Assembly: GCA_029953675.1 (NCBI GenBank)
Contig: JAMWBK010000005.1
Location: forward strand, 620,001-684,000
Reading direction: 5' to 3'
DNA from: Rhodosorus marinus CCMP1338
Taxonomy: Eukaryota; Plantae; Rhodophyta
Length of the DNA: 64,000 bases
Shown: positions 5,338 through 58,375 of the stretch, one piece after another
Layout of the letters: every line of letters starts with the position of its first letter
Position numbering within the stretch: the stretch's first letter is position 1
The notes under the pieces: generated by a model
What the model saw: the letters and a program-made list of their open reading frames with translations, nothing else
What the model was told of the DNA's origin: nothing
Databases searched by the model: none
Position numbers and translations under genes: made by a program

Positions 5338-8036
5338 ATGGCTCCGGTTCACCGTCGGGGTGTGGGCATTTCGCCCTTCGAACAGCACCGACTTGAGAAA
5401 GAGCAGAAGGAGAACAGAGAGAAGGCAGATACGGAGGCTGTGTTTGAGTCTTTTGTGAAGTCTTTTGAGGTTGACGAGGAGGAAGAGGAGGAGAAAAGAG
5501 CAGGTGGTCTAGGATTTGTTCAAGGAGGCACAGCATTCGGTGACAAGGCCGACTCTGAAGACCTGGAGAAGGTCACAAAAGTGAAAAAGAAGAACCTGTT
5601 TCTCCCCCCCCAGACCGTCAGAAATAGCTCGCATAAAGCTGCCAAAAAGCCTCGACCGATTTCAGACGATGACGACGACGACGTGGTACAGTAAGCTCAG
5701 ATCTTAAGAGGGAAGAATGCGATAGTCATCGTTTCTCAAGCTGAGGAAGTCAAAACCAAACCCCTTTTCTTCATCCCAGGATTGCAAAAGGTCCGAAGAA
5801 GAGAAATATTGATGTTCTCATGGAAGATCTAAAGAAGAAGCAAGAAGCAAGGGAAAGGTTTGGAGTCAGCGACTTGTCGCCGGTCGCAGCAGGCGATAGG
5901 AAAGGTTCCTTTGATGCCGGTGATCCCACTACCACTAATATCTTCGTCGGCAACCTGGTAGGCTTCCCTTCGCACGATTCTGAGTAGATCTCCTTATGGA
6001 CGCGCGGGGGCGGAAGATGATTCATTCTGCGGCATCGCTTCTATTCCAGCTTCGGACCAGGCAATCCAAGATTTGCGTGAAGCTGGAATATAGGGCGTTC
6101 CACGGAACGGATCATCTTCTAGTGGCCTGCGCAGACTCAACAGAGTCAACCCGTGACTGGCCGATGCCAGAACTTGTCGAATCGGCTTCTAACTCTGTGG
6201 AACGAATGCGCGTCATCTTGCACAGTCTCCATTAATAGAAGAGGAGAGGTTGCTTAGGCTCTTCGGCAAATATGGTCCGATTGCCAGCATAAAGGTCATG
6301 TGGCCGAGGACTGAAGAGGAGCGAGCGAGAGGTCACGTCTCTGGGTTTGTTGCCTTCATGGAGAGAGTTGACGCTGAAGCTGCTCATGACGCCCTTCGGC
6401 GACATTCGCTAGACGGTAGAGATCTTCGATTGGCATGGGGAAAGGTAAGAATGTGACGAATTTGGGTCATGTTGAAGCTCGAAGATGAGTTGAGCAAACA
6501 CGTATCCTTCGCTCGAATTGAAAAAAAAGGCCGTTGCAAGACCTTCTGCGCCCCTGCCGCTTCCTGAGGGAATGGAGTATGGAGGGTCTGCCTCGAAATC
6601 GCTTAAAGTGGACGAAGCGATAATAAGAGCGGATTCATCAAAGCCAGAGATTCGAATTAGCATTCCACTGGATCTCGCACGAAGAAGAGAAATAAACCTC
6701 CTTGCAGCGTTCGTAGTTAAAGAAGGATTTGAATTTGAGAAGGCGGTTACAGAAAAGGAATCGGTGAGCAAAGGCACAAGATCGTCTGTGTGCCTGGAGG
6801 GAGGGGTTCTAGTCTAATCGAACTTTCGTCAATATGGTGTGTAGGAAACTGGCTCCTCATCGCGGTTCAAGTTCCTTTTCGATAAGACGGAAATGCATTC
6901 GTCGGAGGGGCGATATTATCGATGGCGTGTGTACTCGCTTCTACAAAATGATCTAGACAGACAGTGGCGGACGTTTCCGTTCGCAATCGCCGAGAGCAGT
7001 GCCCTGATTAATCCACCAACATGTGGAACCCCTATGCACAATCCAGGCTGGAGAGATTCAGAGGGTAAAGCCAAACGAACGGGGGTCGCCAGCTCAGAGT
7101 TAGCTGACAGCAAGGACCCCAGCACGATGGATAGTCAGCTTTTGGATGAAGACGAAAAGAAGCTCACCCAACTTTTACGGTAATTGGCTCAGTTTCCAAA
7201 GCAGCTACTTGCACGGAAGGTCATCTGACGCATGTCGTTCTTTTCGTGCGCTGAGCAGCTCGCTTAGCAAGCGTCGAGAATCTGTTGCCGACGCGATGGT
7301 GTTCTGCGTGAGCAGGGCTTCGTGCGCGGGTGACATTGTGTCCATAATTGCGGAATCCCTAACTCTCAGCGAAACTCCCATAGACGTGAAGATTGCCAGG
7401 CTTTTCTTGGTATCTGATATCCTGCACAACAGCGCGTCAGCCCAAGTCAAGAACGCTTGGGCTTACCGGTCAAGGTTTCAGATGGTGTTGGACGACGTCT
7501 TCGATTCGATCGGTAAGCAGTAGGAACAATACGGCTAGCTTTTGACAGCCCGGTTTGCTCTAGTTCTGAACATTGCTTTCGTTTTTGTTTCAGGAGGAAG
7601 CTATAGAGATATTGACGGGCGGTTAACGGCGAATGCGGTCCGCTCTCAGGTAGAGAGGGTCCTTGGGGCTTGGGATACGTGGTCACTGTACGCTCCAGAA
7701 GTCCTTGAGAAGTATCGGAATCTGTTCCTTGGTTTGGTGGATGAGCTGAATCGCGGTAGACTCGAGGCAGAAACTCTTAGAGAGCCAGCCACGAAGGAAA
7801 CCGATCCTGGATTTCGGTCAGCCGATTCGAAGGTGGACGCTGAGAAAGAATCCTTGGACGGCGAGCCTCTTGAAGATGATGTGGATGGAGAACCGCTGGA
7901 AGATCTCGATGGAGAACCCCTTGGAGACGGTATTGATGGAGAACCGCTCGAAGAAGAGTTGGACGCGAAACCAATGCAGCAGGATAACACAGAGGAGGGT
8001 GATCACAACGAAGGATACGACGGGGAAGCGCTCTAG
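5338..8036 (+). CDS. U2SURP: U2 snRNP-associated SURP motif-containing protein (SR140): RRM, SURP, CID and acidic DGEPL repeats
   Basis: KKRNIDVLMEDLKK; DAGDPTTTNIFVGNL|SPLIEEERLLRLFGKYGPIASIKVMWPRTEEE (RRM); LAAFVVKEGFEFE and RYYRWRVYSLLQND (SURP); KIARLFLVSDILHNS (CID); C-terminal DGEPLE repeats. Confidence 0.9.
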
Positions 8037-54848: not shown

Positions 54849-55930
54849 ATGAACCGACTGCTCAGGGTTCCGATATCCAGGAGTCAGTTCCAGGGATTGA
54901 TTGGATGGAGGAACGGGAGTCGGAGTGGTACCCGGGGTCTGAGCTCGTTGGTTACGAATTCGGAGCTTTCGAGGAGGGTGGATATAATGGACCAGCTTGG
55001 TAAAAATATTATGGTAAGGACTGGTTCGTTTTCATTGTGGGTCTTTTGCAAGTCTCTTTTTGTCCCGAGGGGGAGATGCAGGGTCTAGATGCGGCGTGGC
55101 TAATACTGAACATCTCTACACGATTTCTGTGCGTAAAGACGCCTTTGTGGAACGTTGCAGACGAACATGTGGAAGATGAGGTTTTCAAAGCTGAGAACCA
55201 AATTCAATGGTACAGAAACTTCTATGGGAAAAACGGCAAAGGCGAAGGAGAACTTAACAAGGTGCAGGATTGGAGCAACAGATTCATATGATGTGAAAAC
55301 GCGAAAACGCGAAAACGCGCTTATGGTAGCCTTTGGAAACTCATCCGGTTTTGTTTGACACCCAGGATCTGTACTTTGCGGCCGAGGAGCTGTACAACGT
55401 CTTGCATGCTTATCATGCCACGGTAAGATCGAAACCGCGACTGCATTGATTGAATACTAAGATTTTTTTTCTCAAGCTGCTTATTTTGTCATCACCTTGG
55501 CTTTGCCTTTCATTCGCAAAATCAGCGGCTGATTAGCAGAGGAATGCTGTCTCTGGAGAACGAACTGTTGAGGCAGAGCGGACCTCTTGGAAGTATGTCG
55601 TTAGTAATGAACGCGCTGAAGTTTGATCTCAAATACTCGACGTGCTAACCAGTCTCGTTTCCTTTAATCAGCTTCCATGGGACGCATCAGTGACGACCTT
55701 ACAAAACAATTGTATGGCTGGAATGATGCGGTTTCAAAGTTCATCATGACGCTTCCTGTGAAATCAACACTGAGATTTAAGTGCAATAAGGAACTCTCCT
55801 GGTCATTTGCTTGCGTAACTTCGCTCCTTGAATTACCCCGTGCCAGGTGCGATTTCATGACGTCCCTCCGGTTCAGACGTTACCGGCATTCCCTTGACCT
55901 GCAGTGTTCAACTTCGGGTATGCGCTAACA
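54849..55930 (+). CDS. Spliced protein of unknown function with a mitochondrial-like presequence; 3' end uncertain
   Basis: A phase-consistent exon chain can be built: MNRLLRVPISRSQ...GKNIM|TPLWNVADEH...ELNK|DLYFAAEELYNVLHAYHAT|RLISRGMLSLENELL...|SMGRISDDLTKQLYGWND, using GT-AG introns. Confidence 0.55.
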
Positions 55931-56662
55931 AGAAATTGCTTCATCCCACTTATCCAGCTACGATCTGAAGGGAAGCACAGGGTCCGGATTCTACCTCCCT
56001 GACGAGCACCTTCCAGACAACTGAAGTCTGCGCAGTTTCCTCCACCTTGGGAGCTGGGACGAGTTCGATGGTGCCCAGGCGAACCTCTTGACGGTTGAAA
56101 AAAAACTAGTTGTGTTCTCATGCTAAAGTCAAAACATAAATTAACCTTTTCTGCAACTTGGACTACTGGGGTATTCGTTCGAGCATCCGAATCGTTTCGC
56201 GAAGATGGGACGGGTTACACCTTCTTCTGCACGATCTTAGTCTGGAACGTGTTGTCGATGTGCATCTGAGAAGCCCGTTGCTTTCCTGTCGATTCCTGAA
56301 GTGCATGAAAATTTCCGGTCGCTCCAGCATGTCTTAGCCAACCTCTATTCTTAGATCGCAATTTAAATGATTGAGAACGTACAAAGATCGATCGCTACTG
56401 ACAAGTCGCGTCAGTATCCCAGACTAACGAACCACGATCGATTGTACTGCGTCCCAGCAAGCATCGTTACTGCGCCCAGGGTGTGCACGGTGATCAGGCA
56501 CTGCTCGGCGGTCTTTAGGCACTGCACACGTGATCCTAGAGCTTCCTCGGGCGGTCTAATGATTCTCAGTTTCCTTCTCTTTCCTCGTTGGCCATGAAGG
56601 ACGACCGAGCGGCGAGAATGTAAACGATCTGAAGTCACCAACAGGAGCACTGCAGGATCGAA

Positions 56663-57569
56663 ATGTTGCTATCAATATCGAGGCTGTCTGCATTGGCCTC
56701 GAGGGTTAGTTTCAGCCACTCCTCATGGTTTTGCGTTCCCGATGGCGGGATGGTAAGAACAATATTCAGCATTGTTGATCAGCTCCTTAGCATTGTTTCT
56801 GAGTCTTTGCGTTGACGTATTCTTGCCTGTTTGAACAGACGGGGTACGAAGTCCTGGCCAGGGGAACTGGGTTCTTCACACGCTCAACGCGAGGAGATCT
56901 CGTCGCGCTCTTCTCCGCTCACGTTTCAGCGCCGTTTAAATGGAGGAAATATTTCCCCGAACAGGAATGGCTTGACCACGTTGAGGATCGGCATTGTGAA
57001 AACCGAATTGCGTTGAGCCAAGGCCAAGTACTACGTGTGCCTCAGGAGGAGATCGTCCAAGTCCCGCAGCTCGATGCCGCGGCGTATCAGCTTCCTACTG
57101 AAGACGAAAAGGTAGTTCTGAATCATGGGGTCAAGGTATTGACGTTGGAAGACTCCGTTGCCGACGAGGTCTTCGTTTGCGGATATGAACTTATTGGTGG
57201 CGATTGCGGGTGATAGCATGTCACGACAACTCCAGGAGTAATTGTGGAACCGAATTGCTTCTAACCAGTGCACTGTGTTGTTGACGGTTTAGGTCTACTA
57301 CTGAGGACGTCACTCCCACAGCATTGCGAGGAGCTGTTGTTGACACCGTTGGCCCGAGAATATTCGTAAGGACTGAGGATGGAAATACGGAGTTTGGGAT
57401 GTGCGGAGGTCCAACTGTGAAAGGCGAAAACCATGAGAAATGTATTGGATTGTTGGAGGGTCGCGTTCCAGATCCTCCAGCTGAAGCGGGTCGCGTTCCT
57501 CATGGAAGAGCTGGCCAGTCCGCGTTGATCCCGTCGTCGGTGTTGTCGAAGTTGATTAACGCGCTGTAG
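56663..57569 (+). CDS. Chymotrypsin-fold (PA clan) peptidase-like protein with a Cys nucleophile; exons 56663-56752, 56839-57209, 57293-57569; 245 aa
   Basis: Both introns are GT-AG and phase-consistent; the second has CTAAC at 57261. Motif order: RGTGFF, FSAHV, LDAAAY, VFVCGYE, GMCGGP, CIGLLEG, LIPSSVLSKLI. Confidence 0.8.
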
Positions 57570-57691
57570 TTGGAAGCCGCGCGCGTGGAAATACGAGGAC
57601 TCCGCTTGACTGCAAAGGTGGTTAGCATAGATTTTAAGAGATTCTAGTCCAGGCAATGTCGGAAAGGCGGAGCCGTGAAGAACAACATACT

Positions 57692-58375
57692 TCAAGCCTC
57701 CCGCTGACTGCCGTCCCGGGGATCCAGATGCCTGATGATGGTAGCCGGCGTCCCGGCGATGACGACGTCACTGGGAAATTTCTTCGTCACAACTGCGCCA
57801 GCACCGACGACTACTCGATCTCCAACCGAAGACCCCGGACAGAAGACGGCGGATCCTCCGATCCAGCAGTCGTTGCCAATCGTGATCTCACGGGCATCTT
57901 CGAGGAACGTGGAACGGAGCTTGTGATCTAAGGGATGCCTTGCTGTATACATCTAACGAATTTTGAGAGCGGAATATAAGAAGAGCTTGCCGAAACGCAA
58001 CGTGATTTGGAAGTTGTAACGGACCTGTACTCCGGGACCCATAAAGCAATTGTCACCTAAAGTAATCTTGACAACATCCAAGAAGACACAGTTGAAGTTA
58101 ATGAAGGCATCCTTTCCGACATGTATGTTATAGCCATAGTCGCAATAGAAAGGCGGAATGATCCAAGGCTGAGAGTCCTCAGGGAAGTTTATGTTGAGCT
58201 CCTCCCGAATAAGTCGCAGACGGTCTTTCTCGTATCTGGTGTTGTTGAAAACGAAGCATGCGTCATGTGCTTTTTCCCGTTCGAGCATCAAGAGCTTGCA
58301 AGTCGGATCATAACTTTCTCCCCGAAGCATCAGCTCCTTCTGCCTCTGGCCTTCCGCATCCTCCGTATTATCCAT
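57692..58375 (-). CDS. Maltose/galactoside O-acetyltransferase family (left-handed beta-helix), one intron
   Basis: KELMLRGESYDP, IIPPFYCDYGYNIHVG, FINFNCVFLD, GPGVQ|MYTARHPLD, ITIGNDCWIGGSA and VVGAGAVVTKKFPSDVVIAGTPA. Confidence 0.93.

What the first reader, a model, noticed from the sequence alone, without database searches (positions are those of the whole stretch)
56663..57569. Cellular, intron-containing chymotrypsin-fold protease with a cysteine nucleophile (3C-like His-Asp-Cys triad)
Seen: a three-exon 245-aa gene with PA-clan landmarks in the right order and spacing. These are GTGFF, SAHV (His codon 56920), LDAAA (Asp 57073), VFVCGY, GMCGGP (Cys TGC 57402-57404), CIGLLEG and a terminal IPS...L helix. 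Established: cellular trypsin-like enzymes have GxSGGP, and to my knowledge the Cys variant of this fold (GxCG) is characteristic of RNA-virus 3C/3C-like proteases. Inference: either an independent Ser-to-Cys switch in a cellular family or a domesticated viral protease that has gained introns. The leader MLLSISRLSALASRVSFSHS looks like a mitochondrial presequence. This is the best candidate in the window for an undescribed system.
Basis: partly seen in the sequence, partly recalled or inferred. Interest (0 to 1): 0.85.

Follow-up and report, generated by a model that had tools for sequence, protein, structure and literature searches.

The report
Cellular HtrA-like protease using cysteine
This red-alga nuclear gene belongs to a widespread, unstudied family of eukaryotic chymotrypsin-fold enzymes whose catalytic serine is replaced by cysteine, a combination that protease classifications list only for RNA viruses.

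Summary
Exons 56663-56752, 56839-57209 and 57293-57569 (+) encode the 245-aa protein, with His58 (CAC 56920), Asp109 (GAT 57073) and Cys191 (TGC 57402). It is identical to Rhodosorus marinus KAJ8904650.1. A transcript-derived protein from another Rhodosorus source confirms both splice junctions and the Cys.

It is not a one-off. A profile search found 357 cluster representatives. In a 100-sequence alignment His is kept in 99, Asp in 100 and Cys in 97, mostly as G-M-C-G-G-P. Named members come from red algae, a glaucophyte and two amoebozoans. None of the source names seen implies a tested function.

An AlphaFold model built on that alignment is confident (pLDDT 94.5). Its best solved-structure matches are HtrA1, DegS and DegP. 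Sequence profiles reach HTRA1 (E 6e-5) and Pfam Trypsin_2, but no viral peptidase family. The locus is ordinary nuclear DNA.

The best reading is a PDZ-less, HtrA-derived cysteine endopeptidase, probably mitochondrial. A domesticated viral 3C protease is not supported. Triad geometry, activity and localisation were not tested. I found no description of a cellular PA-clan cysteine family, so I rate it a new variant of a known kind.

The parts
56663..56752 (+). Exon 1, residues 1-30. Residues 1-16 (56663-56710) are the basic, acid-free putative mitochondrial presequence MLLSISRLSALASRVS. Residues 17-30 (56711-56752) carry the family-conserved N-terminal strand motif (F-S-H-S-S-W-F-C-V-P-D-G-G-M).
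   Evidence: sequence and splice sites. (the transcript product has the same length and junction). (SSWFxhPxxGM conserved, and upstream extensions basic). (strand 17-23 modelled at high confidence).
56753..56838 (+). Intron 1, 86 nt, GT...AG.
   Evidence: The junction is confirmed by transcript product P0005.
56839..57209 (+). Exon 2, residues 31-153 plus two bases of Gly154. It encodes the N-terminal beta-barrel and the start of the second barrel, with catalytic His58 and Asp109.
56920..56922 (+). CAC, His58 (S-A-H-V), the general base of the triad.
   Evidence: His in 99/100 family members.
57073..57075 (+). GAT, Asp109 (L-D-A-A-A), the triad acid.
   Evidence: Asp in 100/100 members.
57210..57292 (+). 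Intron 2, 83 nt, GT...AG, retained in some transcripts.
   Evidence: P0002 (ends ...GDCG, then a stop) and P0004 (starts inside the intron) come from one MMETSP transcript, and P0005 is the spliced form.
57293..57569 (+). Exon 3, last base of Gly154 to Leu245 plus TAG. It encodes the rest of the C-terminal barrel, the nucleophile motif and the C-terminal helix.
57396..57413 (+). G-M-C-G-G-P: the nucleophile Cys191 (TGC 57402-57404) with the oxyanion-hole glycines.
   Evidence: Cys in 97/100 and Gly189/Gly192 in 100/100 members. The motif aligns with G-N-S-G-G-P of HTRA1.
57456..57458 (+). GAG, Glu209 in G-L-L-E-G. It is a family-specific, nearly invariant residue next to the predicted substrate-binding strand and a candidate specificity determinant (inference).
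   Evidence: Glu in 96/100 members. Its role was not tested.

Best explanation
The gene encodes a small, single-domain, PDZ-less member of the chymotrypsin (PA) clan. It descends from HtrA/DegP-type cellular serine proteases, and the nucleophile has become cysteine. It most likely acts as an endopeptidase. On that reading His58, oriented by Asp109, deprotonates Cys191. The thiolate attacks the scissile carbonyl, and the backbone NH groups of the G-M-C-G-G motif stabilise the oxyanion. A thioester acyl-enzyme is then hydrolysed. The short basic N-terminal extension most likely sends the protein to mitochondria, where it would work in protein processing or quality control. Shown here: the gene model, its expression and splicing, the fold, conservation of the three residues, the relationship to HtrA, and occurrence in several eukaryotic groups. 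Inferred: triad geometry, catalytic activity, substrate, organelle and physiological role.
For: The gene is real and expressed. The family is large: 357 representatives, 190 of them at E<=1e-10. His is kept in 99/100, Asp in 100/100, Cys in 97/100 and the flanking Gly residues in 100/100. That pattern indicates selection on a working active site. The AlphaFold2 model built on the 100-sequence alignment has pLDDT 94.5 and pTM 0.91, with two beta-barrels and a C-terminal helix. The top 50 Foldseek PDB hits are HtrA1, HtrA3, DegS, DegP, Deg9 and one bacterial trypsin-like domain, at probability 1.0 and target-normalised TM up to 0.75. A profile search of PDB sequences gives HTRA1 at E 6e-5, then HTRA3, HTRA2 and DegP/DegQ, with GmCGGP aligned on GNSGGP. 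Pfam Trypsin_2 is hit by 49/100 members, best E 2e-12. NCBIfam gives only weak DegP/HtrA-type hits among protease models. Named members are eukaryotic: Rhodosorus, Agarophyton, Galdieria, Porphyridium, Cyanophora, Planoprotostelium and Nolandella. The locus is ordinary nuclear DNA. The three Ser-bearing members are each closest to Cys-bearing members, so Cys looks like the ancestral state among the sequences recovered. In 92 full-length sequences, some of them redundant cluster members, the N-terminal extensions have 13.4% Arg against 5.3% in the mature part. Asp+Glu is 3.0% against 14.5%, and 70/92 have no acidic residue in the first 20 positions.
Against: No coordinates were available, so convergence of His, Asp and Cys was not measured. 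No biochemical data exist. The query itself hits no Pfam model, even at E<=10. The first ten residues are modelled as a helix at mean pLDDT 89, so they could be structural rather than a cleaved presequence. Many family members have only 9-15 residues upstream of the conserved strand, which is short for a mitochondrial signal. No targeting predictor was run. Conserved Cys-His-Asp on this fold could also serve another acyl-transfer reaction.
Confidence: 0.65

Rival explanations
1. It is a domesticated protease of a picorna-like RNA virus (3C or 3C-like) that integrated into a eukaryotic genome, acquired introns and a targeting signal, and then spread.
For: It shares the triad composition and G-x-C-G-G motif with viral PA-clan cysteine proteases. 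Foldseek against viral models gives hits as strong as the cellular ones (E 2e-9 to 4e-7), including Picornavirales polyproteins. MEROPS lists PA-clan cysteine families only from +RNA viruses (PMC6524800).
Against: None of 100 members hits any viral peptidase Pfam family, whereas 49 hit Trypsin_2. The PDB sequence profile reaches HtrA1-3 and DegP, with no viral protease among the 60 listed hits. The best viral fold hits are sobemo- and barna-like serine proteases, so the similarity is generic to the fold. The locus has no helicase, RdRp or capsid remnants. The IMG/VR motif scan found nothing. There is no conserved His downstream of the nucleophile where 3C enzymes carry their G-x-H motif. That motif is cited from my own knowledge. 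The family has G-x-x-E-G there.
Confidence: 0.05
2. The fold and triad are real, but the protein is not an endopeptidase. It could be a Cys-dependent hydrolase or transferase for another acyl substrate, or a redox-switched binding protein.
For: Activity was not tested. The family has its own invariant features of unknown role: Pro62 in a roughly 20-residue insert after the catalytic His, and Glu209. The PDZ domains that usually gate HtrA proteases are absent.
Against: Every characterised PA-clan protein that keeps a complete triad and the G-x-(S/C)-G-G oxyanion motif is a peptidase (established knowledge of the clan). Near-total conservation of His, Asp, Cys and both glycines argues against a non-catalytic role.
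Confidence: 0.12
3. The enzyme is an active cysteine protease but is not mitochondrial. It could be cytosolic or lie in another compartment, with the N-terminal segment being a structural element or a propeptide.
For: The N-terminal helix 5-15 and strand 17-23 are modelled confidently as part of the domain. Many homologues have only 9-15 residues before the conserved strand.
Against: The extensions vary from 9 to more than 100 residues and are not conserved in sequence. They are uniformly Arg/Ser/Leu/Ala-rich and acid-poor, and Arg-x-(Phe/x) motifs often lie just upstream of the conserved strand. They also occur in amoebozoans, a group without plastids. The starts of the red-algal and glaucophyte members show no Phe near the N-terminus. 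From my own knowledge, such a Phe is typical of plastid transit peptides in those lineages.
Confidence: 0.3
4. It is an AIM24 ('altered inheritance of mitochondria protein 24') homologue, as the UniRef record is named.
For: Only the UniRef100_A0AAV8UQ25 name.
Against: The Pfam scan finds no AIM24 domain or any other family, even at E<=10. The fold and profile matches are to trypsin/HtrA proteases. GenBank calls it a hypothetical protein.
Confidence: 0.01

Closest known systems
HtrA/DegP/DegS proteases (MEROPS S1C; Pfam Trypsin_2 PF13365), including mitochondrial HtrA2/Omi
   Same: These are the best fold matches and the best sequence-profile matches. The motif layout is the same: G-(S/T)-G-F ... 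(N/S)-A-H-V for His, D-(I/L/A)-A for Asp, and T-x(6-7)-G-x-nucleophile-G-G-P. Both are cellular. The likely mitochondrial residence would parallel HtrA2.
   Different: The nucleophile is Cys, not Ser, in 97% of members. There is no PDZ domain. The protein ends about 54 residues after the nucleophile, in a helix. It has a family-specific insert after the catalytic His with an invariant Pro62, a conserved N-terminal SSWFxhP strand and a nearly invariant Glu209. Oligomeric state is unknown.
[quoted passage not shown]
   Same: They have the chymotrypsin fold with a His-Asp/Glu-Cys triad and a G-x-C-G-G nucleophile motif, and presumably the same thioester chemistry.
   Different: This is a stand-alone nuclear gene with introns, not a polyprotein domain. 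No Pfam or PDB sequence match to any viral family was found. There is no conserved His in the position of the viral G-x-H specificity motif. The fold similarity is no better than to viral serine proteases.
Laboratory nucleophile exchange in TEV protease (PMC4576821)
   Same: It shows that Ser and Cys can be swapped on this fold with few accommodating mutations. The three Ser-bearing members nested among Cys-bearing ones look like natural examples.
   Different: That work concerns a viral enzyme evolved in vitro. Here the switch is natural, apparently old and in a cellular lineage.

Membership tests
PA clan (chymotrypsin-fold) peptidases | Two six-stranded beta-barrels with the active site between them | tested here: met
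   AF2 model pLDDT 94.5, pTM 0.91, with strand order typical of the fold plus a C-terminal helix. 274 PDB matches at E<=1e-3, the top ones being HtrA/DegS at probability 1.0.
PA clan (chymotrypsin-fold) peptidases | Catalytic residues in the order His, Asp, nucleophile, with a G-x-Nuc-G-G oxyanion motif | tested here: met
   His58, Asp109 and Cys191. Conservation is 99, 100 and 97 of 100, and Gly189/Gly192 are kept in 100 of 100.
PA clan (chymotrypsin-fold) peptidases | The three side chains converge in space | not testable with these tools
   Model coordinates are not exposed to the scripting environment. Only motif alignment to HTRA1 and secondary-structure placement support it.
PA clan (chymotrypsin-fold) peptidases | Peptide-bond hydrolysis | not testable with these tools
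   This needs the recombinant enzyme.
HtrA/DegP family (MEROPS S1C) | Significant sequence similarity of the protease domain | tested here: met
   Family profile against PDB gives HTRA1 at E 6e-5, HTRA3 at 4e-3 and HTRA2 at 2e-2. Trypsin_2 is hit by 49/100 members. The similarity is weak, and the query alone hits nothing.
HtrA/DegP family (MEROPS S1C) | Serine nucleophile (G-N-S-G-G-P) | tested here: not met
   Cys in 97/100 members, including the window's gene (TGC 57402).
HtrA/DegP family (MEROPS S1C) | One or more C-terminal PDZ domains | tested here: not met
   The protein ends at residue 245 after a single helix. No PDZ hit was found in any of 100 members.
Viral 3C/3C-like cysteine proteases (MEROPS PA-clan C families) | Cys nucleophile on the chymotrypsin fold | tested here: met
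Viral 3C/3C-like cysteine proteases (MEROPS PA-clan C families) | Sequence membership in a viral peptidase family | tested here: not met
   No viral peptidase Pfam family was hit at E<=0.01 by any of 100 members. No viral protease is among the 60 listed PDB profile hits.
Viral 3C/3C-like cysteine proteases (MEROPS PA-clan C families) | Encoded as part of a viral polyprotein or replicase module | tested here: not met
   It is a stand-alone three-exon gene flanked by TGT, a WD40 histone-binding protein, an acetyltransferase, a longin SNARE, Bax inhibitor-1 and PEX1. The IMG/VR motif scan found nothing.
AIM24 family (the UniRef name) | AIM24 domain (PF01987) | tested here: not met
   The Pfam scan at E<=10 returned no family at all.

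The most novel reading that the evidence does not exclude
This eukaryote-wide, probably mitochondrial, HtrA-derived family with a cysteine nucleophile is the cellular lineage from which, or next to which, the 3C-like cysteine proteases of picorna-like RNA viruses arose. It would then be the missing intermediate in the proposed HtrA-to-3C route.
Probability: 0.08. Interest if true: 0.9.

Novelty: new variant of a known kind. Interest (0 to 1): 0.7.

Why it matters
Protease classification and reviews treat cysteine-nucleophile chymotrypsin-fold enzymes as a speciality of positive-strand RNA viruses (PMC6524800). A conserved cellular family with this chemistry would add a cellular cysteine family to the PA clan. 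It gives a natural and apparently old example of nucleophile exchange, with three independent Cys-to-Ser changes, to set beside laboratory evolution work (PMC4576821). It is also a concrete group to include when testing the hypothesis that viral 3C proteases derive from HtrA-like enzymes. Finally, it points to a possible unrecognised mitochondrial protease in red algae, glaucophytes and amoebozoans.

Tried and rejected
1. A Pfam scan and a PDB sequence search with the single protein gave nothing usable. Profiles were needed.

2. The first AlphaFold run used a 3-sequence alignment and was useless, with pLDDT 35. The 100-sequence run succeeded.

3. The search for homologous proteins with the 100-sequence alignment was capped at 8000 scored candidates and returned only 8 hits, missing most of the alignment's own members. 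A trimmed 12-sequence core alignment returned 22 hits but few names.

With 15 sequences it found nothing in IMG/VR and no true relative in 185,579 prokaryotic genomes. These scans look for the exact peptide pattern [MFN]GMCGGP[VA], so divergent relatives would be missed.

5. The polyubiquitin hits at the top of the PDB profile search sum eight sub-threshold repeat matches and are artefacts.

6. The 12-sequence profile against PDB was less sensitive and found only Der p 3 and trypsin.

7. Foldseek could not discriminate viral from cellular ancestry.

8. A literature search for the GMCGGP motif gave one paper, on carotenoids in bitter melon, judged irrelevant from its title. Searches for cellular PA-clan cysteine proteases found none. 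A search for the accession prefix GECG01 found nothing.

9. The UniRef name AIM24 was considered and rejected.

10. A peroxisomal Tysnd1/Deg15-like role was considered and dropped. The C-terminus (-NAL) is not a PTS1-type tripeptide, judged from my own knowledge of that signal.

Full report
**1. What is in the sequence**

Reading 56300-57900 and assembling the three proposed exons gives a 738-nt CDS.
- Exon 1 is 56663-56752, exon 2 is 56839-57209 and exon 3 is 57293-57569.
- The introns are 86 nt (GTAAGA...CAG) and 83 nt (GTGATA...TAG).
- His58 is CAC at 56920, Asp109 is GAT at 57073 and Cys191 is TGC at 57402.
- An in-frame TGA at 56630 lies upstream, with no ATG between it and the start.

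The protein is identical to KAJ8904650.1, 'hypothetical protein NDN08_001168' of the red alga Rhodosorus marinus. The window lies in a 3.19-Mb contig of assembly GCA_029953675.1.

**2. Expression and splicing**

MMETSP transcriptome proteins in the same 90% cluster support the model.
- P0005 (245 aa, 89% identical) aligns without a gap across both junctions and keeps SAHVSAP, LDAAA and GMCGGP.
- P0002 ends at ...GDCG, and P0004 starts inside intron 2. Both come from one transcript, so an intron-2-retaining isoform also exists.

Cys is present in two Rhodosorus sources.

**3. It is a family, and the Cys is the rule**

A profile search over 1.84 billion cluster representatives returned 357 proteins at E<=1e-3, 190 at E<=1e-10 and 17 at E<=1e-30. 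Almost all full-length hits contain G-M-C-G-G-P or a close variant.

In a 100-member alignment (A2) the conservation is as follows:

| Position | Members keeping it |
|---|---|
| His58 | 99/100 |
| Asp109 | 100/100 |
| Cys191 | 97/100 (Ser in the other 3) |
| Gly189, Gly192 | 100/100 each |
| Pro62 | 100/100 |
| Glu209 | 96/100 |

The three Ser-bearing members are unrelated to one another, and each is closest to Cys-bearing members. Cys therefore looks ancestral among the recovered sequences, and the Ser forms look like independent secondary changes.

Named members are all eukaryotic:
- Red algae: Rhodosorus, Agarophyton chilense, Galdieria phlegrea and Porphyridium purpureum.
- A glaucophyte: Cyanophora paradoxa.
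- Amoebozoans: Planoprotostelium fungivorum and Nolandella sp.

The rest are environmental or transcriptome sequences. Where a source name was seen, it was 'hypothetical', 'uncharacterized' or a bare transcript or gene identifier.

**4. Fold**

With only three sequences AlphaFold gave pLDDT 35. With A2 it gave pLDDT 94.5 and pTM 0.91. The model has two beta-barrels and a C-terminal helix (235-244). His58 sits at the start of a short helix after strand 51-55. Asp109 lies just before strand 110-114. Cys191 lies just before strand 194-197. This is the standard PA-clan placement.

Foldseek against the PDB returned HtrA1, DegS, DegP, HtrA3, Deg9 and a bacterial IgA1-protease trypsin domain as its top 50. 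E-values ran from 9e-9 to 1e-7, and target-normalised TM reached 0.75.

**5. Cellular or viral ancestry**

Sequence evidence points to HtrA.
- The A2 profile hits HTRA1 (E 6e-5), then HTRA3, HTRA2 and DegP/DegQ. GmCGGP aligns on GNSGGP. No viral protease is among the 60 listed hits. The polyubiquitin rows above them are repeat-summing artefacts.
- Pfam Trypsin_2 is hit by 49/100 members (best 2e-12). No viral peptidase family is hit.
- Among NCBIfam protease models, only weak DegP/HtrA-type ones and one other serine proteinase model are hit.

Foldseek against predicted viral structures gives equally good E-values (2e-9 to 4e-7). The best hits are sobemo- and barna-like serine proteases, followed by Picornavirales polyproteins and giant-virus trypsin-like proteins. 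This is generic fold similarity and does not discriminate.

A motif scan of IMG/VR found nothing. A scan of one genome per prokaryotic species found six pattern matches, none of them a relative. Both scans need the near-exact motif.

The neighbouring genes encode queuine tRNA-ribosyltransferase, a CAF1C-type WD40 protein, a Mac/hexapeptide acetyltransferase, a longin SNARE, Bax inhibitor-1 and PEX1. There is nothing viral among them.

I conclude that the nucleophile changed to Cys within a cellular HtrA-like lineage. A domesticated 3C protease is unlikely, at about 5%.

**6. Localisation**

Upstream of the conserved strand motif (SSWFxhPxxGM), full-length members carry extensions of 9 to more than 100 residues with no sequence conservation. 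Across 92 sequences, some of them redundant cluster members, the composition is strongly biased:

| Measure | Extension | Mature part |
|---|---|---|
| Arg | 13.4% | 5.3% |
| Asp+Glu | 3.0% | 14.5% |

In addition, 70 of the 92 have no acidic residue in the first 20 positions. Arg-x-Phe or Arg-x-x motifs often precede the mature part.

Amoebozoan members have such extensions too, and that group has no plastids. The red-algal and glaucophyte starts show no Phe near the N-terminus. From my own knowledge, such a Phe is typical of their plastid transit peptides. Mitochondrial import is therefore the best guess.

Two points count against it. The Rhodosorus leader is only about 16 residues long, and AlphaFold models residues 5-15 as a confident helix. 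I did not run a dedicated targeting predictor.

**7. Mechanism**

The shown parts are the fold, the conserved residues in catalytic positions and the kinship with HtrA. The inferred parts are Cys-His-Asp thiol catalysis through a thioester intermediate, with the G-M-C-G-G backbone amides forming the oxyanion hole, and a role in processing or quality control in mitochondria.

The family has features of its own whose roles are unknown:
- the lack of a PDZ domain;
- a roughly 20-residue insert after the catalytic His with an invariant Pro62;
- the N-terminal SSWFxhP strand;
- the nearly invariant Glu209, which lies next to the predicted substrate-binding strand and is a candidate specificity determinant.

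**8. Comparison with what is known, and novelty**

PMC6524800 states that the nine PA-clan cysteine families in MEROPS all represent positive-strand RNA viruses. It also reports that the viral PA proteases are closest to cellular HtrA (S1C) enzymes. PMC4576821 shows that nucleophile exchange on this fold needs few mutations.

Searches for cellular PA-clan cysteine proteases and for the motif found no description of this family. The UniRef name 'AIM24' has no support.

The protein works like a 3C-type thiol protease, descends from HtrA-type enzymes, and fails defining features of both families. It has a Cys nucleophile and no PDZ domain, unlike HtrA. It has no polyprotein context and no family match, unlike viral 3C. 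I classify it as a new variant of a known kind.

**9. Verdict**

Confidence is about 0.85 that this is a genuine PA-fold, HtrA-related protein with a conserved Cys in the nucleophile position. It is about 0.65 for the full statement, an active cysteine endopeptidase that is probably mitochondrial. Interest is 0.7.

The boldest reading still open is that this lineage is the cellular source or sister of the viral 3C-like proteases. I give that about 8%.

Noticed in passing
window 57199-57299 (residues 151-156, spanning the exon 2/exon 3 junction): A second serine-protease-like motif, G-D-C-G-S-T, lies about 38 residues before the true nucleophile. Close homologues have G-E-S-G-S-G, G-D-S-G-S-G, G-Q-S-G-S-G or G-E-C-G-S-G at the aligned position. 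It falls in the residue block with somewhat lower model confidence (mean pLDDT 87). Its meaning is unknown.
   Followed up: partly
window 57210-57292 (intron 2): One MMETSP transcript retains intron 2 and yields two partial ORFs (P0002 and P0004). Another transcript is fully spliced (P0005). This could be unprocessed RNA or regulated intron retention.
   Followed up: partly
window 56663-57569 (database record): UniRef names this protein 'Altered inheritance of mitochondria protein 24, mitochondrial'. No AIM24 domain or any other Pfam family is detected, and the fold is trypsin-like. The name looks like an annotation error.
   Followed up: yes
window 57692-58375 (- strand): A convergent gene for a Mac/hexapeptide-repeat (maltose or galactoside O-acetyltransferase-like) protein of 203 aa ends only 122 bp from the protease stop codon. 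The two 3' ends must nearly abut or overlap.
   Followed up: no
window 54849-56024 (+ strand): The upstream neighbour is an annotated 217-aa protein with no Pfam hit on record. I did not examine it.
   Followed up: no
L001 6001-7080: A 359-aa family member is called as one uninterrupted ORF on a 163-kb environmental contig, between an aspartyl/lysyl-type tRNA synthetase gene and protein kinase genes. This looks like a compact eukaryotic genome of unknown identity.
   Followed up: no
family alignment A2, positions equivalent to window residues 60-82 and 209: A family-specific insert follows the catalytic His, with an invariant Pro62 and conserved Trp74-Leu75. Glu209 in G-x-x-E-G is nearly invariant. 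Neither feature appears in the HTRA1 segments aligned.
   Followed up: partly
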